64,000 nucleotides of DNA, from positions 348,378,001 through 348,442,000 of the forward strand of contig CM097882.1 of the NCBI GenBank assembly GCA_044892505.1. Direction: 5' to 3'. Below the pieces are notes generated by a model, which ran no database searches, was not told the DNA's origin, and saw only the letters and a program-made list of their open reading frames with translations. This document shows positions 1,408 through 62,408 of the stretch, piece after piece. Positions within the stretch are counted from its first letter, which is position 1, and the number at the start of each line of letters is the position of its first letter. The DNA comes from Schmidtea nova. Its lineage: Eukaryota. A program made the position numbers and the translations under genes.

Positions 1408-1416
1408 GGTTCGATG
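1408..1416 (+). pseudogene. 5' stub (nt 1-9) of tRNA-Val disrupted by copy 1
   Basis: GGTTCGATG at the expected 591-bp register, then element sequence. Confidence 0.9.
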
Positions 1417-4047
1417 ACTCAATCACCTGCTGCTCAGTCAACTGCTGCTGATGTGATGACTCAGTCTATTGGAAATCAGTCAACTGTGACGAAGAAATAT
1501 GAATTAGAAAACATTCTCAAGTATCAAATTTCCAGTTTGCAATGTTTTCAATCGATTTTGGATTATTTTTCGCAACTAAATGGTGGAAATCTCGCTACTG
1601 CCTCAGTTCTTTCTGATGCGAATGCAAGTCAACGGAGTTCTTTCGATCAAGGATCTAAAATTTCTCAAAACCAATCTGATAATATGCCACTTTCTTATGC
1701 TGATATTGAGACTAAATTCACTAAATCAAAGGATTTACTGATTGTCAAGCGCCTGGATTCATTGGAGTCTCAATTTATGAATATGGCTGAAAAGTTAGAT
1801 TATTTGGTTTCTTTTTTTAATGGCTCTGTTGATGATTTATCAGATTTTCCTAAAGTAAATGAAAATAATTTAAATAATAATCCTTTCAATAAAAATAAAG
1901 TTTTTGATATCAAAGATAAATTAATTGTAAATAATGTAGTTTTAGATAAATCAAATATTTCAGAATTTATTGAAAATAATATTGCTAAAATTCCTAATAG
2001 TTTAATTGATGTAAATAATAAAATGTGTAATTCAAATAATAAATTTCTAAATAACCCTAATAAAGAGAATGTTAAACATTTTAATAATCCCAAAGAAACA
2101 TCTTCAATTGATTTGACTAACGATAAAATTATGCCAAATGAAAACATAGAAATAATTATTAAAAATAATAAAAAATCTGTTAAAATTATAGAACCTAATA
2201 AAACAACTAAACAGAAGTATGATAAATTTGAATTTAAAAATCTGGTTCGTATTTTAACGAAAAGGGAACGCCAGAAAATCTTGAATGCCTTCCCTGCTTT
2301 AATACAACTAATTAAAAAGAAAGAATCACAGAGTAAATATTTTGAAATTAATAAATTTCTTTCGAGCAAAGATTTTAATGTGAATCACTTGAATTTAATT
2401 AATTTTGATTATTTTTTCTATAGAAATTGTAATCTTTGTGTATCTTTAAAATTGAACAACGCTCCTGTCATTTCATCAGCACCAAAACCTGTTGTTTTAA
2501 AAACTATTAAATTAATTGACCATAATATCGTCAAAATAAATTCTGAAATCCCTGACTTTGTTCGAGCTCCAATGTCAATTCGAAGATTTTTATTCAATCT
2601 TTCGCACGATCTTTCAAACACTGTTTCCATCAAGGATGAGAAACACAGGGGAAATAAAATAAATAACATTCTTACTTCAATGAAACATAAACAACAATTA
2701 CCAGATTATTTAATAAAATCAAACATTAAATACGAAAATGGTGAGTTCTTATTATTAGATTTGACTAACGATAAAATCAAATTGAACGACGATAATAACT
2801 TGATAAAATCAAATTTTTCTGAACTTACTAGAAGTCAGATTAAAAATCTTTACCATTCTTATCCTTCTCTTAAGGAAGTTTGTTTCGTTGAAAATCTTGA
2901 AACAAGATCATCATCCGTTAGTAAAATTATCGAATCTTTAAAGTTAATTAATGAATTTCCAAAAAATATCATTTTTAAAGAGGGTAAATTTTATCAGTCT
3001 GATAAAAGAACAATCTCACCTAGTAGTTCTCCTGACATAATGTTCAACCTTGGTCTTTTTAATTTAGCTAGTATGAGTAGAAAAGATTGTGAATTAAAAT
3101 CCATTTTAGAGAAGACTGGTTGTGACTTTAAAATAGTTGAAATAATATTCTACCTCAACTATTTAGGCTTGACTCAATCTTTAGAATTTTGCAAAAATCA
3201 AACTTATTCTGATTATGTGAGGAATTACGTCTGCAATTGCTGCTTGATAAACTCACTCTGTAGTATTGCTGATGTTGATTCGCTTTCATCTGAAGATTTT
3301 GAGGGTTGGGCGACCGAAATTGTTCAGAAAATCCCAGTTTCTTCCTATTACTTCAATAGCTGCCAGGAAAAGCTTTTAAAGCTGAAGCAATGGGACATTT
3401 CAACTAAAATCAAAAGAATCCATAACGTTATTTCACCTGAAATAATATCTTATTTAAATAACTTTCTTGACTCTGTAGACGTAAAATTTCCATCTAAGTC
3501 TCAACAACATAATATTCTAATTAAATTAATGAAAGCTATCAATGACATTAAAATTTTTGATGACATACACGGAAATAAAGCAAAAAGACTTGTTTACTTT
3601 TTGCTAAGAGATGCCAAGAAATATTTGAATAAAAATCAACGATTCAGATTATTTGAATCGAGCAATAAATATTGCACTTCAGAGATGGAGAATATAATTT
3701 CAGTAATAATTGAGAACCTTACCAAAGTTACTGACCATGAAGTTACTACTCCTGAAATCACAGTTGAAGAAACGCCAATTGAAATAACTTGTGATCCTGA
3801 ACCTATCGTCTTGATTAAGGAAATAAACTGTTTAAAATGTAACAATATCATCGAAAAATGCATTCTTGTTAGAGATGGAACAAACGTCAACATCTGTGAA
3901 AGCTGTCTATTTGACGCAATTACCTTTGAAAAGCCGATTCCTGAAGCTACTAATTCGGATATCGAAGAAAATATGGAAACAAATAGTAAGAAATCTTGTC
4001 CAAGACCTAGAAAAACAGACAAGAAAACATCAACCAAAGCAAAATGA
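1414..4047 (+). CDS. Retrotransposon ORF1, 877 aa, Asn/Lys-rich, C-terminal C-x2-C-x18-C-x2-C finger and basic tail
   Basis: Long ORF intact in all six copies; ATG overlaps tRNA nt 7-9; ends in TGA in frame with ORF2. Confidence 0.88.
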   Translation: MTQSPAAQSTAADVMTQSIGNQSTVTKKYELENILKYQISSLQCFQSILDYFSQLNGGNLATASVLSDANASQRSSFDQGSKISQNQSDNMPLSYADIETKFTKSKDLLIVKRLDSLESQFMNMAEKLDYLVSFFNGSVDDLSDFPKVNENNLNNNPFNKNKVFDIKDKLIVNNVVLDKSNISEFIENNIAKIPNSLIDVNNKMCNSNNKFLNNPNKENVKHFNNPKETSSIDLTNDKIMPNENIEIIIKNNKKSVKIIEPNKTTKQKYDKFEFKNLVRILTKRERQKILNAFPALIQLIKKKESQSKYFEINKFLSSKDFNVNHLNLINFDYFFYRNCNLCVSLKLNNAPVISSAPKPVVLKTIKLIDHNIVKINSEIPDFVRAPMSIRRFLFNLSHDLSNTVSIKDEKHRGNKINNILTSMKHKQQLPDYLIKSNIKYENGEFLLLDLTNDKIKLNDDNNLIKSNFSELTRSQIKNLYHSYPSLKEVCFVENLETRSSSVSKIIESLKLINEFPKNIIFKEGKFYQSDKRTISPSSSPDIMFNLGLFNLASMSRKDCELKSILEKTGCDFKIVEIIFYLNYLGLTQSLEFCKNQTYSDYVRNYVCNCCLINSLCSIADVDSLSSEDFEGWATEIVQKIPVSSYYFNSCQEKLLKLKQWDISTKIKRIHNVISPEIISYLNNFLDSVDVKFPSKSQQHNILIKLMKAINDIKIFDDIHGNKAKRLVYFLLRDAKKYLNKNQRFRLFESSNKYCTSEMENIISVIIENLTKVTDHEVTTPEITVEETPIEITCDPEPIVLIKEINCLKCNNIIEKCILVRDGTNVNICESCLFDAITFEKPIPEATNSDIEENMETNSKKSCPRPRKTDKKTSTKAK

Positions 4048-4053
4048 AGATGT

Positions 4054-7000
4054 GTGCCTGCATCAGCTCAATCGTCTGCCATTCCCTCTAATGAGACTGA
4101 TGCAGAGAGCACAACTAAAAATAATATTTCAACTATCGACAATCGTGATCCTGAAGTGTGGTTTTCTGATAATGATATTGATTGGTATCTTGAAAACCAC
4201 ATTGATAATCCAATGCATGGATATATTAAATGCTTTATAGTAAATATCATCTGTTCTAACATCACAGAAGATATTGTTGAAATTCCACCATCTATTAGCA
4301 ATGCTGAAATTGTATTTTGTCCACTCAACATTAACAATTCGCACTGGATTCTTTTTGTTTATAGTAAGAAAATGTTATCTTCTTACTTTATTGACCCAAT
4401 CCTTGCAAACAGACAAAAGCCAATCAATAAACAAATGGCTCAGAGAATTAACCTAAAACTGAATAGATTTTTTAATCTAAATATATCTGTGTCCCGACAT
4501 CCACACAAACATCTTGAATATCAAAATAACAGCTTTGATTGTGGCCCATTTACGTGTGCTTATGCTGTGATTATCAGTAAAGATTTGAACAGCTTTCCAA
4601 ATGGGTTCATAGAGAAAATTCGTACCAGTGTGCATGAAAATCAAAATCGTATGCAAATAACCGAATCCACCTTATTCGCTGGTACTAACTCCAAGATGGA
4701 CATGACCAAAATAAATATCAAGAAAGCCCTTGCAAAAAAGAAAGTCATCACCAACACCTCAGATATGACCAAAGTATTGAACACTCAAAAACCGTGTGTG
4801 TCATCAATAATTAGTAAATATTACGAAAGTAATTCTAAAATAACAGTCTTATCTGCCGAACTAACTTTAAACCTAATTGCACAAAATACCTCCTTCATAG
4901 CTGATAATGTCACTTTCAAGCAGTTCAAAGGAATCGATCATGTTATAAGTATCATTCCTAAATTTAACGATTGGTGTCTCTTTGTCTATTCGAATAAACT
5001 TGACAGGAGCTACATGTTCGACTTCAATTATCGAAACATTGATGAAAGGCTAATTGAAATTGGTGAAAAGATAACTGAATATCTGAATCAATTCACTCTT
5101 GTTTCTAAAATAAAATTCACACCTCATCATAGAATTTCTCATCCAACATTTCATTCTTACGATGATCAATATTTTGCAAGTTCTTTTATTGTATTTTTTG
5201 AGAAACTTGTCTTTGAAAGAATACTGGACAATGATAAGGTTTATGACTCATTAAGTGCTCTAAAATATCAGTCTTGTAAAGATCTTTCTCCTAGCCTAAG
5301 TTTCATTAATGGTAAAATATCCGACAAAATTATTGAGGAATATTTTGCTAGCCTAAACTTATCGACCAAATATATTCTTCTAAACACAACAATGTGTACT
5401 GCGCTTTCAGATGATTGCACTGAATACTTGAAAGACTTTGTAAACATTGAGTGCATGATGAAGGCTACTATAATCTTTGTAATCATTTCTCCTCCAAGAG
5501 CCAACGACTTGCTCATGGTTATTGATTACGACGCTGATGAGCACTATTTATTAAGCCCAGTCACTAATGACTTGTTCGTTATGACTGAAGGATTCTGCTA
5601 TAAATTACTAATTAAAATTAATGAGATTAGAGAGAGCACAGGACGTTCCTTGAAATCGCGTAATTGTCGACATGACGTTAAAGGTTCTGGCTTATTTAGT
5701 AGGTTATTAATCTGTGCCTTTATTAAATATTATGCATTTGACCGATCTCTAGAAAATATCAATCTTTATGAAATTGGCAAAATTATCTACTCACTTGTGC
5801 CATTAGTTGATAAAAATGATAATGCTGAGGAAGAAAGACGACTAAAATCAAAAGCTGTAAACTCTTTAAAACTAAATTTAAAACAGCGAATAGAAAAAGC
5901 CAATAATCTTATAATTTCACTTGAACACGCCAGTATTGATGAAATCATAAGTGGCATTCTTTCAAATATTCCTCGTCTTAAAGATTTGAACACCGATCAC
6001 ATTCGTACACCATATTTAGGTACTAAAATAGAAAAAGCTAGAAAATTCAAAAATTCCACTGAGTTTCTGTCAAACATGAAAAAGACTGTGTATAGGATTT
6101 TGGGTAACAACACAGAATCAATTGCACCTCCTTATCAGGAAATTATTGACACTTTCAGTCATCCTGATACATTACCTAGAAATTGGGAAAACATCTTAAA
6201 ATTCACTAAGAGTTCTAAATATAGTCTTGAATTAAATCCAATGACACCTAAAGAAATCCTTTCAAGTCTTTGCAAAGCTGACAACACTTCTCCAGGTCTT
6301 GATAATGTTTGTTATAAAGATCTTTTGTTATTAGACCCTGAATGTAAATTGCTAGCTTTTCTGTACAATAAAATCCTAAAATTAGACATTATTCCTACAA
6401 GTTGGAAATCATTTAAAACCATACTAATCCCCAAACCAGATAAAAATGGCCAATATCATAAAATATATTCTTGGCGACCAATTGCCTTATTATCTGTCAT
6501 TTACAAAGTCTTCGCTTCAGTTTTGGCAAATCGTCTAAGCTTATGGATAAGAAATAATTCCATGTTACACATTGGCCAAAAGGGTGGTTCGGAGTACGAA
6601 GGATGTATTGAACACAACTCTATTCTTTCTGCTATCGTCGAACATTCAAAATACAGCAAGTCTTCACCTTTAACGATAGCTTGGCTAGACATCAAAGATG
6701 CCTTCGGAAGTGTTCCACATGACTACATGTGGACACTGTTAAAACACATAAATGTTAGTGATAGGTTTGTAGGAATTTTAAAACTGCTCTATACTGATAC
6801 AAGCTCGTTTTACTGTTGCAATAAAATGCAGACACCGGATATTCCAATAAAGAAAGGAGTTAAACAAGGTTGTCCGATCTCAATGATATTGTTTGCAATA
6901 GCTATTAACCCAGTACTTGAGTCTATTAATCTATCAAACGTTAATCCTTTTACGATTGGAACATCTCCGGTACAGGTGTTGGCTTATGCGGATGATATCG

Positions 7001-8664
7001 CACTTATCGCGACAAATACCTCTGATCTGCAAATACTCATAAACGTTGCTGTAAACACCGCTAAAACAATTGGATTTGAATATCGTCCAGAAAAGTGCGC
7101 TTATATGCAATTCCCTAAAATAGAAACTGTAAGCGAGATTTCTGTCAACAACGTTCTTATCAAAAAGATTGCAACAAATGAATTTTACCAATACTTGGGA
7201 GTACCAATAGGTGACAATAATGATCAAAGTCCCTATGAAATTCTAAGCAAAGTAATTGAAGACACAAAGAAAATAGCAAATTCTGATCTTTACGGCTGGC
7301 AAAAACTTAAAGCGTATAAGGTCTTTCTGCATTCTCGCTTGATTTTTCCATTTAGAACTAGGGAAATCAAAACAAGTTCTTTAGCTGATTCGAGTAAAAA
7401 TTCAAAATTAAATGTAAATAATACGAGTATTTTGAGGAGTCATCTTAGAAAAATATTGCACTTGCCACACTACTCTGAGATTAGCTATTTTTATAATTCT
7501 ACTGAAAACGGCGGTGCAGGCTGCATAGACTTACTTGACGAGTATCATACACAGACAATCGTGTACTTTTTCCGTTTGTTAACATCAACGTGCGAATATT
7601 CGAAAAAGATAAATACTGACTCGCTTTTATTTGTCACAAGTCCGAGACTCGGAATCAAAAATCCAGTTCTTAAACAAAGTTTAGAATGGATAAATGGAAA
7701 AGAGAGCAAGAAAAACAACAGTGGTTGCAAAACTCGATTTTATCGGTTGCGATCATCCATTGCTTACTTTTCTAAAGTTCACAACATTAAATTGTTATTT
7801 GAAACAGTGAAAGGGAATCCTTCTATCCGTATAACCACTACACTTAAGGGAACACGTATATTATTACCAACATTAAGAAAAGCCTTGTCAATGATTTTAC
7901 ATTCAGCTCTCCAGGATTCGTATCTCGAGAAATGGGAGAATAGCAATCATAATAATCTGCTTGTATCTGCGATAAAACTCTGTCCACTTGTCAACAAGCT
8001 TATTTTCCGCAGTGATTTGACAGAATTTGAATGGAGATTCGTCCATCGAGCAAGAACGAATACATTATCAATATTTGCGAAGCCATATAAAACTGGCGAA
8101 AATCGTCTTTGTCGTAGATGTAAGCTTGAAGACGAGACTTTATCACACGTTCTTCAAACTTGTAAAATGAACAAATCTTTGGCAACTAGTCGACATAACG
8201 CTTGCTTAGAAAAAATAAAAAGCGAGTTGAAAGATCCAAACTTGTTAGTTGTTGCGGATCATAAATGTTCCCTAGTACCGACATCAACTGAACGCGTTGA
8301 TTTAATAATAACCAATAATGATAAAAAGACCATATTATTGGTAGACATGAAATGCCCAATCGATTCGGTGCCCAACTTTGACTTGGCTGATAAAAAAAAC
8401 ATAGAAAAGTATGATAAACTAAAATCAGAAATTAAAATAGCCAAACCCGATTATAAAGTTGAGTTGTTTACCTGCATCATAGGCTCATTAGGATCCATTG
8501 AAATTAAAACACCTGATCTTTTAGTAAAAATGGGAGTAAAAGAAAATAAAGTAAAACGTCTGATGAAAGAGTGTGCAATTAGCAATATTGCGCACTCGGC
8601 CAAAATTTGGTACTTTCATACCAATGGCTTTCTTCCAGATAATATAAGACAAACTTGTAAATAA
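4054..8664 (+). CDS. Retrotransposon ORF2: Ulp1-like protease (1 intact + 2 degenerate repeats), reverse transcriptase, CCHC knuckle, restriction-like endonuclease
   Basis: HW (H97), D114, QNNSFDCG (C163); RT motifs SPGLD, WRPIALL, LDIKDAFGSV, GVKQGCP, YADD (nt 6985), YLGV; CRRC-x8-H-x4-C, RHN, RVD, D-M-K, KY. The frame is open from 4048; the track start is GTG and the first ATG is at 4213. Confidence 0.95.
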   Translation: MPASAQSSAIPSNETDAESTTKNNISTIDNRDPEVWFSDNDIDWYLENHIDNPMHGYIKCFIVNIICSNITEDIVEIPPSISNAEIVFCPLNINNSHWILFVYSKKMLSSYFIDPILANRQKPINKQMAQRINLKLNRFFNLNISVSRHPHKHLEYQNNSFDCGPFTCAYAVIISKDLNSFPNGFIEKIRTSVHENQNRMQITESTLFAGTNSKMDMTKINIKKALAKKKVITNTSDMTKVLNTQKPCVSSIISKYYESNSKITVLSAELTLNLIAQNTSFIADNVTFKQFKGIDHVISIIPKFNDWCLFVYSNKLDRSYMFDFNYRNIDERLIEIGEKITEYLNQFTLVSKIKFTPHHRISHPTFHSYDDQYFASSFIVFFEKLVFERILDNDKVYDSLSALKYQSCKDLSPSLSFINGKISDKIIEEYFASLNLSTKYILLNTTMCTALSDDCTEYLKDFVNIECMMKATIIFVIISPPRANDLLMVIDYDADEHYLLSPVTNDLFVMTEGFCYKLLIKINEIRESTGRSLKSRNCRHDVKGSGLFSRLLICAFIKYYAFDRSLENINLYEIGKIIYSLVPLVDKNDNAEEERRLKSKAVNSLKLNLKQRIEKANNLIISLEHASIDEIISGILSNIPRLKDLNTDHIRTPYLGTKIEKARKFKNSTEFLSNMKKTVYRILGNNTESIAPPYQEIIDTFSHPDTLPRNWENILKFTKSSKYSLELNPMTPKEILSSLCKADNTSPGLDNVCYKDLLLLDPECKLLAFLYNKILKLDIIPTSWKSFKTILIPKPDKNGQYHKIYSWRPIALLSVIYKVFASVLANRLSLWIRNNSMLHIGQKGGSEYEGCIEHNSILSAIVEHSKYSKSSPLTIAWLDIKDAFGSVPHDYMWTLLKHINVSDRFVGILKLLYTDTSSFYCCNKMQTPDIPIKKGVKQGCPISMILFAIAINPVLESINLSNVNPFTIGTSPVQVLAYADDIALIATNTSDLQILINVAVNTAKTIGFEYRPEKCAYMQFPKIETVSEISVNNVLIKKIATNEFYQYLGVPIGDNNDQSPYEILSKVIEDTKKIANSDLYGWQKLKAYKVFLHSRLIFPFRTREIKTSSLADSSKNSKLNVNNTSILRSHLRKILHLPHYSEISYFYNSTENGGAGCIDLLDEYHTQTIVYFFRLLTSTCEYSKKINTDSLLFVTSPRLGIKNPVLKQSLEWINGKESKKNNSGCKTRFYRLRSSIAYFSKVHNIKLLFETVKGNPSIRITTTLKGTRILLPTLRKALSMILHSALQDSYLEKWENSNHNNLLVSAIKLCPLVNKLIFRSDLTEFEWRFVHRARTNTLSIFAKPYKTGENRLCRRCKLEDETLSHVLQTCKMNKSLATSRHNACLEKIKSELKDPNLLVVADHKCSLVPTSTERVDLIITNNDKKTILLVDMKCPIDSVPNFDLADKKNIEKYDKLKSEIKIAKPDYKVELFTCIIGSLGSIEIKTPDLLVKMGVKENKVKRLMKECAISNIAHSAKIWYFHTNGFLPDNIRQTCK
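4058..4105 (+). promoter_or_regulatory. Stem-loop 10 nt downstream of the ORF1 UGA; candidate readthrough/recoding stimulator (same in all six copies)
   Basis: CTGCATCAG (4058-4066) pairs with CTGATGCAG (4097-4105); CTCA (4067-4070) pairs with TGAG (4092-4095) across one bulged A. Confidence 0.55.
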
Positions 8665-9007
8665 ATAATTATATATATATATAAATATTTGCTTTTTAAA
8701 CTCTGTAAATAAAATTTAAAGTAAATATTTTGTAAAGTAATTTTTGTATTAAATATCAAATCTTTTTAATCTGATAAATTGTCTTTGAGAGTTATTAAAT
8801 TGGGAGACCAAGTATTCTGCAACGTATGTCACTTATTCTAGACTTATCAACTTCAAAATAATACAGTCGCAAAGCTGGATGACGAAATCCAAAGAACCAG
8901 AAACTTCCATTCAGATTGAACAATTATATTTTGACTGTGATTGTTTAGGCACTAATCCATGTTGATTAGATAATCTGTAAAAAAAATATGTCAAACTTGT
9001 TATATTT

Positions 9008-9013
9008 AATAAA
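9008..9013 (+). promoter_or_regulatory. AATAAA polyadenylation-like signal at the element 3' end; representative
   Basis: AATAAA 6 nt before the 3' junction in all six copies; no genomic poly(A) follows. Confidence 0.45.
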
Positions 9014-9019
9014 TGTTTA

Positions 9020-9074
9020 TTATCACGTCTGCTTTACACGCAGAAGGTCCCCGGTTCGATCCCGGGTCGAACCA
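9020..9074 (+). pseudogene. 3' remnant (nt 19-73) of tRNA-Val(TAC) after copy 1
   Basis: TTATCACG...CGAACCA; nt 10-18 missing. Confidence 0.92.
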
Positions 9075-9222
9075 AATTTTTATTGTAAATTGTTAAATCT
9101 TGTTTACTATGTTTCCATTGTTTACTAGTGTTATTTTGTGTGTGTGTGTGTTTTATTAGTAAATCAGATCAATTTATTTAGCTGAAAGTTGGTAACAAAC
9201 GAAAATTTGAAAATATTTGCAG

Positions 9223-9295
9223 GGTTCGATGGTGTAGCGGTTATCACGTCTGCTTCACACGCAGAAGGTCCCCGGTTCGATCCCGGGTCGAACCA
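9223..9295 (+). tRNA. tRNA-Val-CAC: tRNA-Val(CAC), upstream flank variant TTTGCAG
   Basis: Canonical body. Confidence 0.95.
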
Positions 9296-9592
9296 TATTT
9301 TATTAATTAGAAACTTCCTAATCTTGATTTTTTCTCAATGGAACACCTTTCTCATATATGTTACAATATTAAAAATGATTGAATAATCAGAGAAAAAAGT
9401 TAAAATTTCATTTTCATAAATGTAGTGTGTGAAAGCTTTCTATCCTTTTGCAATTTTATGATTATTTTGTGCAGTGTTGTTTATTTAAATATGTAACTGT
9501 TGAAAAAAAGAATATTGGATATGAAAATGGATAAAGTATTGCAAGTGTTGATATATATATTGTAAATTTTAACGATTGATAAATTCTTTCAA

Positions 9593-11365: not shown

Positions 11366-11374
11366 GGTTCGATG
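11366..11374 (+). pseudogene. 5' stub of tRNA-Val disrupted by copy 2
   Basis: GGTTCGATG|ACTC. Confidence 0.9.
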
Positions 11375-54446: not shown

Positions 54447-54743
54447 TATTTTATTAATTAGAAACTTCCTAATCTTGATTTTTTCTCAATGGAACACCTT
54501 TCTCATATATGTTACAATATTAAAAATGATTGAATAATCAGAGAAAAAAGTTAAAATTTCATTTTCATAAATGTAGTGTGTGAAAGCTTTCTATCCTTTT
54601 GCAATTTTATGATTATTTTGTGCAGTGTTGTTTATTTAAATATGTAACTGTTGAAAAAAAGAATATTGGATATGAAAATGGATAAAGTATTGCAAGTGTT
54701 GATATATATATTGTAAATTTTAACGATTGATAAATTCTTTCAA

Positions 54744-54752
54744 GGTTCGATG
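54744..54752 (+). pseudogene. 5' stub of tRNA-Val disrupted by copy 6
   Basis: GGTTCGATG|ACTC. Confidence 0.9.
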
Positions 54753-57383
54753 ACTCAATCACCTGCTGCTCAGTCAACTGCTGCTGATGTAATGACTCAG
54801 TCTATTGCAAATCAGTCAACTGTGACGAAGCAATATGAATTAGAAAACATTCTCAAATATCAAATTTCCAGTTTGCAATGTTTTCAATCGATTTTAGATT
54901 ATTTTTCTCAACTAAATGGTGGAAATCTCGCTACTGCCTCAGTTCTATCTGATGCGAATGCAAGTCAACGGAGTTCTTTCGATCAAGGATCTAAAATTTC
55001 TCCAAACCAATCTGATAATATGCCACTTTCTTATGCTGATATTGAGACTAAATTCACTAAATCAAAGGATTTACTTATTGTCAAGCGCCTGGATTCATTG
55101 GAGTCTCAATTTATGAATATGGCTGAAAAGTTAGATTATTTGGTTTCTTTGTTTAATGGCTCTGTTGATGATTTATCAGATTTTCCTAAAGTAAATGAAA
55201 ATAATTTAAATAATAATCCTTTCAATAAAAATAAAGTTTTTGATATCAAAGATAAATTAATTGTAAATAATGTAGTTTTAGATAAATCAAATATTTCAGA
55301 ATTTATTGAAAATAATATTGCTAAAATTCCTAATAGTTTAATTGATGTAAATAATAAAATGTGTAATTCAAATAATAAATTTCTAAATAACCCTAATAAA
55401 GAGAATGTTAAACATTTTAATAATCCCAAAGATACATCTTCAATTGATTTGACTAACGATAAAATTATGCCAAATGAAAACATAGAAATAATTATTAAAA
55501 ATAATAAAAAATCTGTTAAAATTATAGAACTTTATAAAACAACTAAACAGAAGTATGATAAATTTGAATTTAAAAGTCTGGTTCGTATTTTAACGAAAAG
55601 GGAACGCCAGAAAATCTTGAATGCCTTCCCTGCTTTAATACAACTAATTAAAAAGAAAGAATCACAGAGTAAATATTTTGAAATTAATAAATTTCTTTCG
55701 AGCAAAGATTTTAATGTGAATCACTTGAATTTAATTAATTTTGATTATTTTTTCTATAGAAATTGTAATCTTTGTGTATCTTTAAAATTGAACAACGCTC
55801 CTGTCATTTCATCAGCACCAAAACCTGTTGTTTTAAAAACTATTAAATTAATTGACCATAATATCGTCAAAATAAATTCTGAAATCCCTGACTTTGTTCG
55901 AGCTCCAATGTCAATTCGAAGATTTTTATTCAATCTTTCGCACGATCTTTCAAACACTGTTTCCATCAAGGATGAGAAACACAGGGGAAATAAAATAAAT
56001 AACATTCTTACTTCAATGAAACATAAACAACAATTACCAGATTATTTAATAAAATCAAACATTAAATACGAAAATGGTGAGTTCTTATTATTAGATTTGA
56101 CTAACGATAAAATCAAATTGAACGACGATAATAACTTGATAAAATCAAATTTTTCTGAACTTACTAGAAGTCAGATTAAAAATCTTTACCATTCTTATCC
56201 TTCTCTTAAGGAAGTTTGTTTCGTTGAAAATCTTGAAACAAGATCATCATCCGTTAGTAAAATTATCGAATCTTTAAAGTTAATTAATGAATTTCCAAAA
56301 AATATCATTTTTAAAGAGGGTAAATTTTATCAGTCTGATAAAAGAACAATCTCACCTAGTAGTTCTCCTGACATAATGTTCAACCTTGGTCTTTTTAATT
56401 TAGCTAGTATGAGTAGAAAAGATTGTGAATTAAAATCCATTTTAGAGAAGACTGGTTGTGACTTTAAAATAGTTGAAATAATATTCTACCTCAACTATTT
56501 AGGCTTGACTCAATCTTTAGAATTTTGCAAAAATCAAACTTATTCTGATTATGTGAGGAATTACGTCTGCAATTGCTGCTTGATAAACTCACTCTGTAGT
56601 ATTGCTGATGTTGATTCGCTTTCATCTGAAGATTTTGAGGGTTGGGCGACCGAAATTGTTCAGAAAATCCCAGTTTCTTCCTATTACTTCAATAGCTGCC
56701 AGGAAAAGCTTTTAAAGCTGAAGCAATGGGACATTTCAACTAAAATCAAAAGAATCCATAACGTTATTTCACCTGAAATAATATCTTATTTAAATAACTT
56801 TCTTGACTCTGTAGACGTAAAATTTCCATCTAAGTCTCAACAACATAATATTCTAATTAAATTAATGAAAGCTATCAATGACATTAAAATTTTTGATGAC
56901 ATACACGGAAATAAAGCAAAAAGACTTGTTTACTTTTTGCTAAGAGATGCCAAGAAATATTTGAATAAAAATCAACGATTCAGATTATTTGAATCGAGCA
57001 ATAAATATTGCACTTTAGAGATGGAGAATATAATTTCAGTAATAATTGAGAACCTTACCAAAGTTACTGACCATGAAGTTACTACTCCTGAAATCACAGT
57101 TGAAGAAACGCCAATTGAAATAACTTGTGATCCTGAACCTATCGTCTTGATTAAGGAAATAAACTGTTTAAAATGCAACAATATCATCGAAAAATGCATT
57201 CTTGTTAGAGATGGAACAAACGTCAACATCTGTGAAAGCTGTCTATTTGACGCAATTACCTTTGAAAAGCCGATTCCTGAAGCTACTAATTCGGATATCG
57301 AAGAAAATATAGAAACAAATTGTAAGAAATCTTGTCCAAGACCTAGAAAAACAGACAAGAAAACATCAACCAAAGCAAAATGA
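54750..57383 (+). CDS. ORF1 of copy 6 (877 aa)
   Basis: Intact. Confidence 0.88.
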   Translation: MTQSPAAQSTAADVMTQSIANQSTVTKQYELENILKYQISSLQCFQSILDYFSQLNGGNLATASVLSDANASQRSSFDQGSKISPNQSDNMPLSYADIETKFTKSKDLLIVKRLDSLESQFMNMAEKLDYLVSLFNGSVDDLSDFPKVNENNLNNNPFNKNKVFDIKDKLIVNNVVLDKSNISEFIENNIAKIPNSLIDVNNKMCNSNNKFLNNPNKENVKHFNNPKDTSSIDLTNDKIMPNENIEIIIKNNKKSVKIIELYKTTKQKYDKFEFKSLVRILTKRERQKILNAFPALIQLIKKKESQSKYFEINKFLSSKDFNVNHLNLINFDYFFYRNCNLCVSLKLNNAPVISSAPKPVVLKTIKLIDHNIVKINSEIPDFVRAPMSIRRFLFNLSHDLSNTVSIKDEKHRGNKINNILTSMKHKQQLPDYLIKSNIKYENGEFLLLDLTNDKIKLNDDNNLIKSNFSELTRSQIKNLYHSYPSLKEVCFVENLETRSSSVSKIIESLKLINEFPKNIIFKEGKFYQSDKRTISPSSSPDIMFNLGLFNLASMSRKDCELKSILEKTGCDFKIVEIIFYLNYLGLTQSLEFCKNQTYSDYVRNYVCNCCLINSLCSIADVDSLSSEDFEGWATEIVQKIPVSSYYFNSCQEKLLKLKQWDISTKIKRIHNVISPEIISYLNNFLDSVDVKFPSKSQQHNILIKLMKAINDIKIFDDIHGNKAKRLVYFLLRDAKKYLNKNQRFRLFESSNKYCTLEMENIISVIIENLTKVTDHEVTTPEITVEETPIEITCDPEPIVLIKEINCLKCNNIIEKCILVRDGTNVNICESCLFDAITFEKPIPEATNSDIEENIETNCKKSCPRPRKTDKKTSTKAK

Positions 57384-60300
57384 AGATGTGTGCCTGCATC
57401 AGCTCAATCGTCTGCCATTCCCTCTAATGAGACTGATGCAGAGAGCACAACTAAAAATAATATTTCAACTATCGACAATCGTGATCCTGAAGTGTGGTTT
57501 TCTGATAATGATATTGATTGGTATCTTGAAAACCACATTGATAATCCAATGCATGGATATATTAAATGCTTTATAGTAAATATCATCTGTTCTAACATCA
57601 CAGAAGATATTGTTGAAATTCCACCATCTATTAGCAATGCTGAAATTGTATTTTGTCCACTCAACATTAACAATTCGCACTGGATTCTTTTTGTTTATAG
57701 TAAGAAAATGTTATCTTCTTACTTTATTGACCCAATCCTTGCAAACAGACAAAAGCCAATCAATAAACAAATGGCTCAGAGAATTAATCTAAAACTGAAT
57801 AGATTTTTTAATCTAAATATATCTGTGTCCCGACATCCACACAAACATCTTGAATATCAGAATAACAGCTTTGACTGTGGCCCATTTACGTGTGCTTATG
57901 CTGTGATTATCAGTAAAGATTTGAACAGCTTTCCAAATGGGTTCATAGAGAAAATTCGTACCAGTGTGCATGAAAATCAAAATCGTATGCAAATAACCGA
58001 ATCCACCTTATTCGCTGGTACTAACTCCAAGATGGACATGACCAAAATAAATATCAAGAAAGCCCTTGCAAAAAAGAAAGTCATCACCAACACCTCAGAT
58101 ATGACCAAAGTATTGAACACTCAAAAACCGTGTGTGTCATCAATAATTAGTAAATATTACGAAAGTAATTCTAAAATAACAGTCTTATCTGCCGAACTAA
58201 CTTTAAACCTAATTGCACAAAATACCTCCTTCATAGCTGATAATGTCACTTTCAAGCAGTTCAAAGGAATCGATCATGTTATAAGTATCATTCCTAAATT
58301 TAACGATTGGTGTCTCTTTGTCTATTCGAATAAACTTGACAGGAGCTACATGTTCGACTTCAATTATCGAAACATTGATGAAAGGCTAATTGAAATTGGT
58401 GAAAAGATAACTGAATATCTGAATCAATTCACTCTTGTTTCTAAAATAAAATTCACACCTCATCATAGAATTTCTCATCCAACATTTCATTCTTACGATG
58501 ATCAATATTTTGCAAGTTCTTTTATTGTATTTTTTGAGAAACTTGTCTTTGAAAGAATACTGGACAATGATAAGGTTTATGACTCATTAAGTGCTCTAAA
58601 ATATCAGTCTTGTAAAGATCTTTCTCCTAGCCTAAGTTTCATTAATGGTAAAATATCCGACAAAATTATTGAGGAATATTTTGCTAGCCTAAACTTATCG
58701 ACCAAATATATTCTTCTAAACACAACAATGTGTACTGCGCTTTCAGATGATTGCACTGAATACTTGAAAGACTTTGTAAACATTGAGTGCATGATGAAGG
58801 CTACTATAATCTTTGTAATCATTTCTCCTCCAAGAGCCAACGACTTGCTCATGGTTATTGATTACGACGCTGATGAGCACTATTTATTAAGCCCAGTCAC
58901 TAATGACTTGTTCGTTATGACTGAAGGATTCTGCTATAAATTACTAATTAAAATTAATGAGATTAGAGAGAGCACAGGACGTTCCTTGAAATCGCGTAAT
59001 TGTCGACATGACGTTAAAGGTTCTGGCTTATTTAGTAGGTTATTAATCTGTGCCTTTATTAAATATTATGCATTTGACCGATCTCTAGAAAATATCAATC
59101 TTCATGAAATTGGCAAAATTATCTACTCACTTGTGCCATTGGTTGATAAAAATGATAATGCTGAGGAAGAAAGACGACTAAAATCAAAAGCTGTAAACTC
59201 TTTAAAACTAAATTTAAAACAGCGAATAGAAAAAGCCAATAATCTTATAATTTCACTTGAACACGCCAGTATTGATGAAATCATAAGTGGCATTCTTTCA
59301 AATATTCCTCGTCTTAAAGATTTGAACACCGATCACATTCGTACACCATATTTAGGTACTAAAATAGAAAAAGCTAGAAAATTCAAAAATTCCACTGAGT
59401 TTCTGTCAAACATGAAAAAGACTGTGTATAGGATTTTGGGTAACAACACAGAATCAATTGCACCTCCTTATCAGGAAATTATTGACACTTTCAGTCATCC
59501 TGATACATTACCTAGAAATTGGGAAAACATCTTAAAATTCACTAAGAGTTCTAAATATAGTCTTGAATTAAATCCAATGACACCTAAAGAAATCCTTTCA
59601 AGTCTTTGCAAAGCTGACAACACTTCTCCAGGTCTTGATAATGTTTGTTATAAAGATCTTTTGTTATTAGACCCTGAATGTAAATTGCTAGCTTTTCTGT
59701 ACAATAAAATCCTAAAATTAGACATTATTCCTACAAGTTGGAAATCATTTAAAACGATACTAATCCCCAAACCAGATAAAAATGGCCAATATCATAAAAT
59801 ATATTCTTGGCGACCAATTGCCTTATTATCTGTCATTTACAAAGTCTTCGCTTCAGTTTTGGCAAATCGTCTAAGCTTATGGATAAGAAATAATTCCATG
59901 TTACACATTGGCCAAAAGGGTGGTTCGGAGTACGAAGGATGTATTGAACACAACTCTATTCTTTCTGCTATCGTCGAACATTCAAAATACAGCAAGTCTT
60001 CACCTTTAACGATAGCTTGGCTAGACATCAAAGATGCCTTCGGAAGTGTTCCACATGACTACATGTGGACACTGTTAAAACACATAAATGTTAGTGATAG
60101 GTTTGTAGGAATTTTAAAACTGCTCTATACTGATACAAGCTCGTTTTACTGTTGCAATAAAATGCAGACACCGGATATTCCAATAAAGAAAGGAGTTAAA
60201 CAAGGTTGTCCGATCTCAATGATATTGTTTGCAATAGCTATTAACCCAGTACTTGAGTCTATTAATCTATCAAACGTTAATCCTTTTACGATTGGAACAT

Positions 60301-62353
60301 CTCCGGTACAGGTGTTGGCTTATGCGGATGATATCGCACTTATCGCGACAAATACCTCTGATCTGCAAATACTCATAAACGTTGCTGTAAACACCGCTAA
60401 AACAATTGGATTTGAATATCGTCCAGAAAAGTGCGCTTATATGCAATTCCCTAAAATAGAAACTGTAAGCGAGATTTCTGTCAACAACGTTCTTATCAAA
60501 AAGATTGCAACAAATGAATTTTACCAATACTTGGGAGTACCAATAGGTGACAATAATGATCAAAGTCCCTATGAAATTCTAAGCAAAGTAATTGAAGACA
60601 CAAAGAAAATAGCAAATTCTGATCTTTACGGCTGGCAAAAACTTAAAGCGTATAAGGTCTTTCTGCATTCTCGCTTGATTTTTCCATTTAGAACTAGGGA
60701 AATCAAAACAAGTTCTTTAGCTGATTCGAGTAAAAATTCAAAATTAAATGTAAATAATACGAGTATTTTGAGGAGTCATCTTAGAAAAATATTGCACTTG
60801 CCACACTACTCTGAGATTAGCTATTTTTATAATTCTACTGAAAACGGCGGTGCAGGCTGCATAGACTTACTTGACGAGTATCATACACAGACAATCGTGT
60901 ACTTTTTCCGTTTGTTAACATCAACGTGCGAATATTCGAAAAAGATAAATACTGACTCGCTTTTATTTGTCACAAGTCCGAGACTCGGAATCAAAAATCC
61001 AGTTCTTAAACAAAGTTTAGAATGGATAAATGGAAAAGAGAGCAAGAAAAACAACAGTGGTTGCAAAACTCGATTTTATCGGTTGCGATCATCCATTGCT
61101 TACTTTTCTAAAGTTCACAACATTAAATTGTTATTTGAAACAGTGAAAGGGAATCCTTCTATCCGTATAACCACTACACTTAAGGGAACACGTATATTAT
61201 TACCAACATTAAGAAAAGCCTTGTCAATGATTTTACATTCAGCTCTCCAGGATTCGTATCTCGAGAAATGGGAGAATAGCAATCATAATAATCTGCTTGT
61301 ATCTGCGATAAAACTCTGTCCACTTGTCAACAAGCTTATTTTCCGCAGTGATTTGACAGAATTTGAATGGAGATTCGTCCATCGAGCAAGAACGAATACA
61401 TTATCAATATTTGCGAAGCCATATAAAACTGGCGAAAATCGTCTTTGTCGTAGATGTAAGCTTGAAGACGAGACTTTATCACACGTTCTTCAAACTTGTA
61501 AAATGAACAAATCTTTGGCAACTAGTCGACATAACGCTTGCTTAGAAAAAATAAAAAGCGAGTTGAAAGATCCAAACTTGTTAGTTGTTGCGGATCATAA
61601 ATGTTCCCTAGTACCGACATCAACTGAACGCGTTGATTTAATAATAACCAATAATGATAAAAAGACCATATTATTGGTAGACATGAAATGCCCAATCGAT
61701 TCGGTGCCCAACTTTGACTTGGCTGATAAAAAAAACATAGAAAAGTATGATAAACTAAAATCAGAAATTAAAATAGCCAAACCCGATTATAAAGTTGAGT
61801 TGTTTACCTGCATCATAGGCTCATTAGGATCCATTGAAATTAAAACACCTGATCTTTTAGTAAAAATGGGAGTAAAAGAAAATAAAGTAAAACGTCTGAT
61901 GAAAGAGTGTGCAATTAGCAATATTGCGCACTCGGCCAAAATTTGGTACTTTCATACCAATGGCTTTCTTCCAGATAATATAAGACAAACTTGTAAATAA
62001 ATAATTATATATATATAAATATTTGCTTTTTAAACTCTGTAAATAAAATTTAAAGTAAATATTTTGTAAAGTAATTTTTGTTTTAAATATCAAATCTTTT
62101 TAATCTGATAAATTGTCTTTGAGAGTTATTAAATTGGGAGACCAAGTATTCTGCGACGTATGTCATTTATTCTAGACTTATCAACTTCAAAAGAATACAG
62201 TCGCAAAGCTGGATGACGAAATCCAAAGAACCAGAAACTTCCATTCAGATTGAACAATTATATTTTGACTGTGATTGTTTAGGGACTAATCCATGTTGAT
62301 TAGATAATCTGTAAAAAAAATATGTCAAACTTGTTATATTTAATAAATGTTTA
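54753..62353 (+). mobile_element. RLE non-LTR retrotransposon copy 6, 7601 bp, in tRNA-Val(TAC)
   Basis: Same junctions; intact ORFs. Confidence 0.95.
57390..62000 (+). CDS. ORF2 of copy 6 (protease-RT-RLE)
   Basis: Intact; same motifs. Confidence 0.95.
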   Translation: MPASAQSSAIPSNETDAESTTKNNISTIDNRDPEVWFSDNDIDWYLENHIDNPMHGYIKCFIVNIICSNITEDIVEIPPSISNAEIVFCPLNINNSHWILFVYSKKMLSSYFIDPILANRQKPINKQMAQRINLKLNRFFNLNISVSRHPHKHLEYQNNSFDCGPFTCAYAVIISKDLNSFPNGFIEKIRTSVHENQNRMQITESTLFAGTNSKMDMTKINIKKALAKKKVITNTSDMTKVLNTQKPCVSSIISKYYESNSKITVLSAELTLNLIAQNTSFIADNVTFKQFKGIDHVISIIPKFNDWCLFVYSNKLDRSYMFDFNYRNIDERLIEIGEKITEYLNQFTLVSKIKFTPHHRISHPTFHSYDDQYFASSFIVFFEKLVFERILDNDKVYDSLSALKYQSCKDLSPSLSFINGKISDKIIEEYFASLNLSTKYILLNTTMCTALSDDCTEYLKDFVNIECMMKATIIFVIISPPRANDLLMVIDYDADEHYLLSPVTNDLFVMTEGFCYKLLIKINEIRESTGRSLKSRNCRHDVKGSGLFSRLLICAFIKYYAFDRSLENINLHEIGKIIYSLVPLVDKNDNAEEERRLKSKAVNSLKLNLKQRIEKANNLIISLEHASIDEIISGILSNIPRLKDLNTDHIRTPYLGTKIEKARKFKNSTEFLSNMKKTVYRILGNNTESIAPPYQEIIDTFSHPDTLPRNWENILKFTKSSKYSLELNPMTPKEILSSLCKADNTSPGLDNVCYKDLLLLDPECKLLAFLYNKILKLDIIPTSWKSFKTILIPKPDKNGQYHKIYSWRPIALLSVIYKVFASVLANRLSLWIRNNSMLHIGQKGGSEYEGCIEHNSILSAIVEHSKYSKSSPLTIAWLDIKDAFGSVPHDYMWTLLKHINVSDRFVGILKLLYTDTSSFYCCNKMQTPDIPIKKGVKQGCPISMILFAIAINPVLESINLSNVNPFTIGTSPVQVLAYADDIALIATNTSDLQILINVAVNTAKTIGFEYRPEKCAYMQFPKIETVSEISVNNVLIKKIATNEFYQYLGVPIGDNNDQSPYEILSKVIEDTKKIANSDLYGWQKLKAYKVFLHSRLIFPFRTREIKTSSLADSSKNSKLNVNNTSILRSHLRKILHLPHYSEISYFYNSTENGGAGCIDLLDEYHTQTIVYFFRLLTSTCEYSKKINTDSLLFVTSPRLGIKNPVLKQSLEWINGKESKKNNSGCKTRFYRLRSSIAYFSKVHNIKLLFETVKGNPSIRITTTLKGTRILLPTLRKALSMILHSALQDSYLEKWENSNHNNLLVSAIKLCPLVNKLIFRSDLTEFEWRFVHRARTNTLSIFAKPYKTGENRLCRRCKLEDETLSHVLQTCKMNKSLATSRHNACLEKIKSELKDPNLLVVADHKCSLVPTSTERVDLIITNNDKKTILLVDMKCPIDSVPNFDLADKKNIEKYDKLKSEIKIAKPDYKVELFTCIIGSLGSIEIKTPDLLVKMGVKENKVKRLMKECAISNIAHSAKIWYFHTNGFLPDNIRQTCK

Positions 62354-62408
62354 TTATCACGTCTGCTTTACACGCAGAAGGTCCCCGGTTCGATCCCGGG
62401 TCGAACCA
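62354..62408 (+). pseudogene. 3' remnant of tRNA-Val(TAC) after copy 6
   Basis: nt 19-73. Confidence 0.92.

What the first reader, a model, noticed from the sequence alone, without database searches (positions are those of the whole stretch)
1408..62408. tRNA-Val-targeting, site-specific NeSL-like retrotransposon colonising a tRNA-Val tandem array
Seen: six 7601-7603-bp copies, all with both ORFs intact, inserted at the identical nucleotide of a tRNA-Val gene in the same orientation as the tRNA. They make up 45,613 of 64,000 bp and occupy 6 of 31 TAC slots. ORF2 has RT (YADD), a CCHC knuckle, RHN and PD-(D/E)xK-type residues (RVD...DMK...KY), which is the RLE architecture. Known: RLE elements (R2, R4, NeSL, CRE) target multicopy RNA genes, and an Ulp1-like protease is a hallmark of the NeSL clade. 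From memory, a few NeSL relatives target tRNA genes (e.g. YURE, some planarian LIN families), but I do not recall one targeting the tRNA-Val D-arm. Inference: this is a recently active, probably undescribed family using a redundant tRNA array as a safe haven.
Basis: partly seen in the sequence, partly recalled or inferred. Interest (0 to 1): 0.92.

Follow-up and report, generated by a model that had tools for sequence, protein, structure and literature searches.

The report
tRNA-Val-specific retrotransposon in a tRNA array
Six intact copies of a 7.6-kb jumping gene sit at exactly the same spot inside valine-tRNA genes of a tandem tRNA array; it is a new member of a known group of site-specific elements, and its second protein appears to be made by reading through a stop codon.

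Summary
The window is a 591-bp tandem array of tRNA-Val(TAC)/tRNA-Val(CAC) gene pairs. Six of its 31 TAC-type slots hold a 7.6-kb insertion with identical junctions in the D-arm, in the tRNA's orientation. All six copies have open reading frames and are 99.5-99.99% identical.

It is a non-LTR retrotransposon with a restriction-like endonuclease (RLE). ORF2 has a Ulp1-like protease, a reverse transcriptase (RT), a CCHC knuckle and an RLE. Its best solved relatives are R2 proteins.

Site specificity is real. Differences among the copies are strongly synonymous-biased (ORF2 dN/dS about 0.09), so at least three functional lineages inserted separately. A relative only 43% identical also sits in the D-loop of a tRNA-Val gene. 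Others sit in tRNA-Phe and another tRNA.

Published planarian LIN families of the NeSL clade (tRNA-Arg, tRNA-Glu) have similar 3' ends. This is therefore a new member of a known kind. I could not check Repbase or Dfam.

New here: ORF1 and ORF2 share one frame, split by a single UGA, in 12 of 12 family members. A conserved stem-loop with compensatory changes follows the UGA, and half have UGACGG. This suggests programmed readthrough, in a gag-protease-pol-like layout. ORF1 has no known relatives. There is no 5' UTR.

The parts
1..64000 (+). Tandem array of tRNA-Val(TAC)/tRNA-Val(CAC) gene pairs with a 591-bp period. It holds 25 intact TAC genes, 31 intact CAC genes and 6 interrupted TAC-type slots.
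1408..9074 (+). Copy 1 with the split tRNA-Val(TAC). tRNA nt 1-9 lie at 1408-1416 and tRNA nt 21-73 at 9022-9074.
1414..4047 (+). ORF1, 877 aa. The ATG coincides with tRNA nt 7-9, so there is no 5' UTR. The N-terminus is disordered or coiled-coil, residues 275-780 form a confidently folded core of unknown fold, and the C-terminus has a CxxC...CxxC motif. It ends in TGA.
1413..1486 (+). Imperfect 42-nt tandem duplication at the 5' end. The start of ORF1, with its ATG, occurs twice.
4045..4112 (+). Candidate recoding cassette. An in-frame TGA (4045-4047) is followed by a 6-nt spacer and a conserved stem-loop (5' arm 4054-4067, 3' arm 4096-4112).
4048..8664 (+). ORF2 frame, open from the codon after the TGA. 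The 1536 aa are counted from 4054.
4294..4590 (+). Ulp1/C48 cysteine-protease domain (ORF2 residues 81-179). H97, D114, Q157 and C163 are invariant in 12 of 12 relatives.
4972..5205 (+). Second, degenerate C48-like module that lacks the catalytic His and Cys. A third module of the same secondary-structure pattern follows (ORF2 residues 424-561, about 5323-5736), supported only by the model.
6427..7206 (+). Reverse transcriptase (ORF2 residues 792-1051), with YADD at 6985-6996.
8110..8163 (+). CCHC zinc knuckle (C1353, C1356, H1365, C1370).
8191..8352 (+). Restriction-like endonuclease core: the RH motif (R1380, H1381), D1416 and D1431-x-K1433.
8665..9021 (+). 3' UTR. AATAAA lies 14 nt from the end and there is no poly(A) tract. 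The terminal motif is shared with relatives and with the published LIN25_SM.
11366..19031 (+). Copy 2 with the split tRNA-Val(TAC). It is the most divergent copy, 39-42 substitutions from the others.
21323..28989 (+). Copy 3 with the split tRNA-Val(TAC).
32094..39760 (+). Copy 4 with the split tRNA-Val(TAC). It differs from copy 3 by one substitution.
40280..47945 (+). Copy 5. The 5' flank is TAC-type, but the 3' remainder is a CAC gene carrying a T insertion, and 221 bp of array are missing relative to a simple insertion.
54744..62408 (+). Copy 6 with the split tRNA-Val(TAC).

Best explanation
This is a recently active, sequence-specific non-LTR retrotransposon with a restriction-like endonuclease. 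It belongs to the NeSL-type, protease-bearing lineage and is closest to the planarian R5/LIN-like families. It inserts into the D-arm of tRNA-Val genes.

Inferred mechanism, by analogy with R2:
- The ORF2 protein recognises the tRNA-Val gene.
- Its RLE nicks the bottom strand at tRNA nt 18-21.
- The RT copies the element RNA from that nick (target-primed reverse transcription), starting at a precise 3' end just after AATAAA.
- The top strand is cut about 10 nt upstream, so 9-14 bp of the D-arm (the A-box) are lost.
- The 5' end joins at a 3-nt ATG microhomology.

Expression, also inferred:
- The element starts exactly at the ORF1 ATG, so its mRNA must begin in upstream host sequence or acquire a leader.
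- Pol III cannot transcribe it, because the sense strand carries many T runs.
- ORF2 is made as an ORF1-ORF2 fusion by programmed readthrough of a single UGA, stimulated by a stem-loop 6 nt downstream.
- The Ulp1-like protease placed directly after the UGA would then cut the polyprotein, giving a gag-protease-pol-like layout.

The redundant tRNA array tolerates the loss of about one fifth of its TAC genes in this window.
For: Shown:
- Six full-length copies have identical junctions, the same orientation and intact ORFs.
- There are no LTRs or terminal inverted repeats.
- RVT_1 and Peptidase_C48 are present. The RT, CCHC and RLE regions align to solved R2 proteins (9nl2, E = 8e-54, including the C-terminal endonuclease block).
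- The catalytic residues of the protease, RT, CCHC and RLE are invariant in 12 relatives.
- The N-terminal model matches Ulp1, SENP and NEDP1 structures.
- Among the six copies, ORF2 has 14 synonymous against 5 nonsynonymous differences (ratio 0.09) and ORF1 has 12 against 17 (ratio 0.35), with combined p = 2.6e-7. The differences therefore arose in lineages under coding selection.
- Relative L004 (43% identical ORF2) ends in the D-loop of tRNA-Val(AAC), followed by a Val-AAC/CAC/TAC cluster. L006 ends in the tRNA-Phe(GAA) D-loop. L001 ends in a tRNA D-loop-like flank.
- Published LIN15_SM and LIN25_SM are tRNA-Arg- and tRNA-Glu-specific, and the LIN25_SM 3' end resembles those of the window element and L001.

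Readthrough:
- 12 of 12 elements have one frame with a single internal stop, always TGA. The next base is C in 9 of 12, and the context is UGACGG in 6 and UGACUA in 1.
- The first in-frame AUG lies 50-283 codons downstream in 11 of 12.
- A 14-bp stem shows 96% pairing, and 4 pairs carry compensatory changes. Only 1 of 500 shuffles reached the observed covariation score, and slid controls pair at 17-42%.
- More distant members have stems of different sequence at the same place.
- UGACGG and UGACUA followed by a downstream extended stem-loop are the known type II readthrough signals (PMC13517186).

Pol III is excluded by 56 runs of four or more T on the sense strand, the first at offset 138.
Against: - No RNA or protein data exist, so transcription start, readthrough and protease processing are all inferred.
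- An RT phylogeny against named NeSL, R5 and LIN sequences was not possible. Clade placement rests on architecture and on a 3'-end resemblance read from a machine-read supplementary figure.
- Only one locus of one genome was seen.
- Copies 1-2-3 are spaced by exactly four array units, and the array shows recombinant units. Array dynamics therefore contributed to the present layout, and copies 3-6 (1-9 differences) may not all be separate insertions.
- Individual stem-loop z-scores are modest in four relatives, at -1.0 to -1.6.
- The window element has UGA-A rather than UGA-C.
- L006 lacks a recognisable tRNA 5' part upstream.
Confidence: 0.85

Rival explanations
1. One chance insertion into one tRNA-Val gene was later multiplied by unequal crossing-over or segmental duplication within the tandem array. 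On this view the identical junctions say nothing about target specificity.
For: - Copies 1, 2 and 3 are spaced by 9958 and 9957 bp, which is exactly four array units.
- The array contains recombinant units: an extra CAC gene at 29138, and a CAC-type 3' flank on copy 5 with 221 bp missing.
- A T-insertion CAC variant is shared by the genes flanking copies 3, 4 and 5.
- Copies 3-6 differ by only 1-9 substitutions.
Against: - Differences among the copies are strongly biased to synonymous sites (ORF2 ratio 0.09, p about 1e-6). Resident dead copies would not show this.
- All 12 ORFs are intact.
- A 43%-identical relative in another organism is also inserted in a tRNA-Val D-loop, and other relatives lie in D-loops of other tRNAs.
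- Published relatives are tRNA-specific.
Confidence: 0.05
2. The element is as described, but ORF2 is not made by readthrough. It is translated separately, by termination-reinitiation (as proposed for SART1, which needs a downstream structure) or by internal or non-AUG initiation. On this view the conserved stem-loop serves reinitiation, RNA packaging or protein binding.
For: - Termination-reinitiation with a downstream RNA structure is documented for the non-LTR element SART1, and an unconventional mechanism is proposed for L1 (PMC5972666).
- The window element and L007 have UGA-A, a weaker readthrough context.
Against: - There is no conserved AUG at or near the stop. The first in-frame AUG is 50-283 codons downstream in 11 of 12 elements, which would remove part or all of the protease domain.
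- The same frame and the same stop codon, UGA, occur in 12 of 12.
- UGACGG or UGACUA occurs in 7 of 12.
- The stem position, beginning at +10, matches known readthrough stimulators.
Confidence: 0.2
3. The layout is an assembly artefact: a repeat-rich tRNA array in which one element was mis-placed or duplicated by the assembler.
For: Long, near-identical tandem repeats are hard to assemble, and copies 3 and 4 differ by a single base.
Against: - The copies carry 62 variable columns with a consistent tree-like pattern.
- Spacings differ (4, 4, 5+, 1 and 12 units).
- The flanks carry their own variants.
- The window contains no N.
- Relatives on independent contigs show the same type of junction.
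Confidence: 0.04

Closest known systems
LIN15_SM and LIN25_SM: planarian R5/LIN lineage of the NeSL clade, from Schmidtea mediterranea (Kojima & Jurka 2015, PMC4640811)
   Same: - RLE-type non-LTR elements that insert sequence-specifically inside tRNA genes (tRNA-Arg and tRNA-Glu).
- They come from an AT-rich host.
- The 3' end is an A/T-rich AATAAA-type terminus without a poly(A) tail. The printed LIN25_SM 3' end resembles those of L001 and the window element.
   Different: - The target here is tRNA-Val (D-loop, nt 9-21).
- I could not compare protein sequences or ORF structure, because Repbase was not available.
- It is not known whether the LIN families share the ORF1-UGA-ORF2 layout.
NeSL-1 of Caenorhabditis elegans and Utopia-1_TSP (NeSL clade)
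   Same: They have an Ulp1-like cysteine protease N-terminal to the RT and a C-terminal zinc knuckle plus RLE. They target multicopy small-RNA genes: spliced-leader and U2 snRNA genes.
   Different: - The target is different.
- Utopia families are described as generally encoding one protein. Here a large (877 aa) lineage-specific ORF1 precedes a UGA.
- Here the protease is followed by one or two degenerate protease-like modules.
R2 (28S rDNA-specific RLE retrotransposon)
   Same: - It is the best solved-structure match for the RT, CCHC and RLE regions.
- Its integration chemistry is target-primed reverse transcription.
- It uses a multicopy RNA gene array as a refuge, with precise 3' junctions and small target deletions.
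   Different: - No N-terminal zinc-finger or Myb domain was detected.
- No HDV-like ribozyme was found.
- The target is a Pol III gene, so co-transcription with the target is implausible.
- There are two reading-frame segments plus a protease.
Type II stop-codon readthrough signals of alphaviruses and coltiviruses, and gammaretroviral gag-pol readthrough
   Same: UGA followed by CGG or CUA, plus an extended stem-loop starting about 10-12 nt from the stop, placed upstream of the protease/polymerase part.
   Different: Here it occurs in a non-LTR retrotransposon, and readthrough has not been measured. My literature searches found no report of programmed readthrough in a non-LTR element.
Dada-tV DNA transposons of fish
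   Same: They insert specifically into tRNA-Val genes, and sometimes other tRNA genes (PMC8869645).
   Different: They are DNA transposons with a transposase and insert in the anticodon arm. They have no RT or RLE.

Membership tests
RLE-bearing non-LTR retrotransposons (R2/NeSL/R4/CRE/HERO group) | Reverse transcriptase with a Y/FxDD catalytic motif | tested here: met
   RVT_1 scores 1.8e-29. YADD is invariant in 12 of 12. The region aligns to R2 RT structures.
RLE-bearing non-LTR retrotransposons (R2/NeSL/R4/CRE/HERO group) | C-terminal CCHC motif followed by a PD-(D/E)XK-type endonuclease with an RH motif | tested here: met
   C1353, C1356, H1365, C1370, R1380, H1381, D1416, D1431 and K1433 are invariant. 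The region aligns to the C-terminal domain of 9nl2. Motif definitions come from PMC4838377.
RLE-bearing non-LTR retrotransposons (R2/NeSL/R4/CRE/HERO group) | No LTRs or terminal inverted repeats; all insertions in one orientation with a precise 3' junction | tested here: met
NeSL clade (including R5/LIN) | RT clusters with NeSL-1, R5 or LIN in a phylogeny | not testable with these tools
   No named NeSL, R5 or LIN protein could be retrieved. The closest relatives are unnamed metagenome or Logan proteins. The only link is 3'-end similarity to LIN25_SM in S6 Fig of PMC4640811.
NeSL clade (including R5/LIN) | Ulp1-like cysteine protease N-terminal to the RT (in nematode NeSL and Utopia-1_TSP) | tested here: met
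   Peptidase_C48. The catalytic H, D, Q and C residues are invariant. Foldseek hits Ulp1 and SENP.
NeSL clade (including R5/LIN) | Sequence-specific insertion into a multicopy small-RNA gene | tested here: met
   There are six identical junctions in tRNA-Val. Relatives lie in tRNA-Val, tRNA-Phe and another tRNA.
R2 clade proper | Insertion in the 28S rRNA gene; N-terminal zinc-finger/Myb DNA-binding domains; 5' HDV-like self-cleaving ribozyme | tested here: not met
   The target is tRNA-Val. Pfam finds no zinc-finger or Myb domain. Rfam finds no ribozyme in the window or in 7 relatives.
Type II programmed stop-codon readthrough signal | UGA stop with C at +4 (UGACGG or UGACUA), and the downstream ORF in the same frame | tested here: met
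   The stop is TGA in 12 of 12 and the frame is shared in 12 of 12. The next base is C in 9 of 12, with CGG in 6 and CUA in 1. The window copy itself has UGA-AGA.
Type II programmed stop-codon readthrough signal | Conserved extended stem-loop starting about 8-12 nt after the stop | tested here: met
   A 14-bp stem follows a 6-nt spacer and has compensatory changes. Stems of different sequence occupy the same place in L008-L010.
Type II programmed stop-codon readthrough signal | Measured readthrough product | not testable with these tools
   No expression data are available.
Dada DNA transposons (tRNA-targeting) | DDE-type transposase and terminal inverted repeats | tested here: not met
   The element has RT and RLE but no transposase, and no terminal inverted repeats.

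The most novel reading that the evidence does not exclude
This protease-bearing RLE lineage expresses its enzymatic polyprotein through programmed UGA readthrough, driven by a conserved downstream stem-loop. ORF1 acts as a gag-like product and ORF1-protease-RT-RLE as a minor fusion product that the Ulp1-like protease then cuts. That would be a gag-pro-pol expression strategy convergent with gammaretroviruses and alphaviruses. As far as my literature searches reach, it would be the first programmed-readthrough case in a non-LTR retrotransposon. It is combined with a zero-length 5' UTR, which forces dependence on host-derived leader sequence.
Probability: 0.55. Interest if true: 0.72.

Novelty: new member of a known kind. 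Interest (0 to 1): 0.6.

Why it matters
Site-specific RLE retrotransposons are the natural models for how a mobile element finds one exact nucleotide in a genome and lives harmlessly in redundant genes. Only a few tRNA-specific families are on record (tRNA-Pro, tRNA-Arg, tRNA-Glu).

This locus adds tRNA-Val, with six intact and evidently young copies. The metagenome relatives show a whole lineage that has switched among tRNA D-loops, a satellite and other sites. That gives comparative material for learning which protein parts read the target.

The conserved UGA plus stem-loop, the orphan 877-aa ORF1 and the protease followed by degenerate protease-like modules are unexplained features of RLE-element biology. 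They can now be studied by sequence, structure and expression.

The locus also documents a metazoan-type tRNA tandem array in which about 20% of one isoacceptor's genes, within this window, are inactivated by loss of the A-box.

Tried and rejected
- Exact-protein look-up of ORF1 found nothing, so the source organism could not be identified. Run and sample accessions of the relatives occur in no held paper.
- Rfam found no ribozyme or other RNA family in the window element or in seven relatives. It found only tRNAs and, upstream of L005, an SRP RNA 3' part.
- A word-based protein search with ORF1 found nothing. The same search with the ORF2 protease region found only P0002.
- An exhaustive HMMER search with ORF1 gave only 18 relatives.
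- The ORF1 profile has no significant PDB sequence match. Its AlphaFold model has a confident core (residues 275-780) but no Foldseek match (best E = 0.33).
- The metagenome scan with the ORF2 alignment returned only distant RTs at 25-42% identity, and I did not use them.
- A consensus fold of the 3' UTRs gave no convincing structure.
- The third protease-like module is not supported by sequence comparison (E = 4.1 and 0.5).
- The NeSL-1 paper PMC1460889 is not held.
- I rejected Pol III co-transcription with the tRNA, because of the T runs.
- I rejected an HDV-like 5' processing signal, because none was found.
- I rejected a tRNA-supplied start codon, because L003, in a different target, starts with the same ATGAC-CAATCA.

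Full report
**1. Observation**

The window (30% G+C, no N) is a head-to-tail array of tRNA-Val genes on the + strand. ARAGORN finds 56 intact genes, 25 with anticodon TAC and 31 with CAC. They alternate, with 221 bp and 370 bp between gene starts, giving a 591-bp unit. Sorting the slots by upstream flank gives 31 TAC-type slots. Six of these are interrupted.

Each interruption begins after GGTTCG(ATG) and ends before (TT)ATCACG. tRNA nt 1-6/9 are therefore kept on the left, nt 19/21-73 on the right, and 9-14 bp of the D-arm are missing. Each insertion carries an 877-aa and a 1536-aa ORF on the tRNA's strand.

A six-way alignment shows 62 variable columns in 7.67 kb. Copies 3-6 differ by 1-9 substitutions. 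Copies 1 and 2 differ from the rest by 23-42. Both termini occur exactly six times and never in shuffles, so the window has no truncated copies. There are no LTRs or terminal inverted repeats.

**2. What it is**

Pfam finds a reverse transcriptase (RT; 1.8e-29) and a Ulp1/C48 protease domain (6.5e-07) in ORF2, and nothing in ORF1. The C-terminal two thirds of ORF2 match solved R2 retrotransposon proteins best (9nl2, E = 8e-54). The match includes a second aligned block over the CCHC knuckle and the restriction-like endonuclease (RLE). L1 ORF2p and R2Bm score far lower.

In an alignment with 11 relatives (33-52% identity), the following are invariant (motif definitions from PMC4838377):
- the protease set H97, D114, Q157 and C163
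- YADD in the RT
- the knuckle residues C1353, C1356, H1365 and C1370
- the RH motif
- D1416 and D1431-x-K1433 in the endonuclease

An AlphaFold model of ORF2 residues 1-799 hits Ulp1, SENP and NEDP1 structures with probability 1.0. The model shows the same secondary-structure pattern three times. The second module is detectably similar to the first (E = 4e-5) but lacks the catalytic His and Cys. The third is not supported by sequence.

**3. Is the site specificity real?**

The main rival is that one chance insertion was multiplied by array recombination. Some facts favour it. Copies 1-2-3 are spaced by exactly four units. The array contains recombinant units. Copy 5 has a CAC-type 3' remainder with 221 bp of array missing.

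Two results argue against this as the whole story.
- The differences among the copies are far from neutral. ORF2 has 14 synonymous against 5 nonsynonymous changes (ratio 0.09) and ORF1 has 12 against 17 (ratio 0.35), with combined p = 2.6e-7. They therefore accumulated in lineages selected for coding function. At least three lineages (copy 1, copy 2 and copies 3-6) arrived separately at the same nucleotide.
- Relatives found in public assemblies sit at equivalent places. L004 (43% identical ORF2, a 39% G+C host) ends in the D-loop of a tRNA-Val(AAC) gene, followed by Val-AAC, Val-CAC and Val-TAC genes. L006 ends in the D-loop of tRNA-Phe(GAA). L001 ends against a tRNA D-loop-like sequence. L003 lies in a 180-bp satellite.

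Copies 3-6 may still include products of array recombination.

**4. Relation to known families**

Kojima & Jurka (PMC4640811) place protease-bearing NeSL, Utopia and the planarian R5/LIN lineage in one clade. They report NeSL-1_TV as tRNA-Pro-specific, LIN15_SM as tRNA-Arg-specific and LIN25_SM as tRNA-Glu-specific. Their S6 Fig prints a LIN25_SM 3' end that resembles the 3' ends of L001 and of the window element.

This, the AT-richness and the metazoan-type tRNA make a flatworm host plausible but unproven. Neither the window's ORF1 sequence nor the relatives' sample accessions led to an organism name. I found no report of a tRNA-Val-specific non-LTR element. Fish Dada-tV DNA transposons do target tRNA-Val, in the anticodon arm.

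The element is not an R2 proper: it has no 28S target, no zinc-finger or Myb domain, and no HDV-like ribozyme. A formal RT tree with named references, and a Repbase or Dfam search, could not be done.

**5. A conserved recoding signal**

ORF1 and ORF2 are in the same frame and are separated only by a TGA. The same holds in all 11 relatives examined: one frame, one internal stop, always TGA. The next base is C in 9 of 12. The context is UGACGG in 6 and UGACUA in 1. The first in-frame AUG after the stop lies 50-283 codons downstream in 11 of 12, inside or beyond the protease domain.

Six nucleotides after the stop begins a 14-bp stem with a 3-nt bulge. It is conserved at the nucleotide level, including third codon positions. 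It pairs in 96% of cells, and four pairs carry compensatory changes. Only 1 of 500 shuffles reached the observed covariation score. Slid controls pair at 17-42%.

More distant members (L008-L010) have stems of unrelated sequence at the same position, although their individual z-scores are modest. UGACGG or UGACUA followed by an extended stem-loop starting near +12 is the type II readthrough signal of alphaviruses and coltiviruses (PMC13517186).

I therefore propose that ORF2 is made as an ORF1-ORF2 readthrough fusion, with the protease immediately after the stop, as in a gag-pro-pol arrangement. Termination-reinitiation, known for SART1, is the main alternative. My searches found no report of programmed readthrough in a non-LTR element.

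**6. Other anatomy**

- The element begins exactly at the ORF1 ATG. L003, in a different target, begins with the same ATGAC-CAATCA. The ATG therefore belongs to the element and merely overlaps tRNA nt 7-9.
- With no 5' UTR, the mRNA must start in host sequence or receive a leader. The sense strand has 56 runs of four or more T, the first at offset 138, which excludes Pol III read-in from the tRNA promoter.
- A 42-nt imperfect duplication repeats the start of ORF1.
- The 3' end lies 14 nt after an AATAAA and carries no A-tail.
- ORF1 is an orphan. It has 18 relatives among 1.84 billion representatives, a confidently modelled core at residues 275-780 preceded by disordered or coiled-coil sequence, and no Pfam, PDB-sequence or Foldseek match.

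**7. Verdict**

The element is a new member of a known kind: tRNA-specific, protease-bearing RLE retrotransposons.

The insertion mechanism (target-primed reverse transcription with a D-arm deletion) is inferred from family membership. The expression mechanism (readthrough) is inferred from comparative sequence and structure evidence. No broken genes were found in any of the six copies.

I declare one slip.

Noticed in passing
window 29138-29432: An extra CAC gene at 29138 has a CAC-type upstream flank but a TAC-type downstream spacer, and another CAC gene follows 222 bp later. It is a recombinant unit, which shows unequal exchange between TAC and CAC genes in the array.
   Followed up: partly
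window 29138-29211, 31723-31796, 39909-39982, 47892-47945: These CAC genes, or remainders, are 74 nt long because of a one-base T insertion (GGTTCCCC). They are exactly the CAC genes next to copies 3, 4 and 5, which suggests local duplication or gene conversion around these copies.
   Followed up: partly
window 49646, 51419, 52601, 53192, 54374 (gene starts): Five CAC genes carry a D-loop variant (GCGTTT instead of GCGGTT). The change lies inside the stretch that is deleted at the insertions. None of these genes is occupied, but no CAC-type slot is occupied anyway.
   Followed up: no
window, all 31 CAC-type slots: No element has a CAC-type 5' flank, although the TAC and CAC genes are identical around the insertion site and differ only at the anticodon. 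It is unexplained whether the anticodon base, the upstream flank or array history causes this.
   Followed up: no
window 1396-1407 and upstream of each CAC gene (for example 1026-1037): The bases just upstream of the tRNA genes resemble 3' splice sites: ...TTCTTTCAAG before TAC genes and ...TATTTACAG before CAC genes. If the host trans-splices, an acceptor here could supply a leader to the ORF1 that lacks a 5' UTR. This is pure speculation and was not tested.
   Followed up: no
L005 1-115: The 3' part of a metazoan SRP (7SL) RNA gene (60.5 bits; Rfam gathering score 70), with its T-run terminator, lies about 200 bp upstream of ORF1 of a family member. This may be another Pol III-gene-associated target.
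   Followed up: no
L003 1-140 and 7517-8223: A family member is inserted in a tandem repeat of about 180 bp that has no Rfam match. About 70 bp of the repeat is present on both sides of the element, which could be a target duplication or an exchange between units.
   Followed up: partly
L004, L005, L006, L008, L010, L011 (all from sample ERZ27257134): One 'metagenome' assembly holds at least six distinct families of this lineage, 33-39% identical to the window ORF2 over the full-length alignment. Multiple lineages with different targets therefore appear to coexist in one sample, probably in a single host.
   Followed up: partly
window 1408-2240 (copy 1): Thirteen of copy 1's private differences fall in its first 833 nt. 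This suggests that copy 1 has a 5' segment from a different subfamily, or that this region evolves faster.
   Followed up: no
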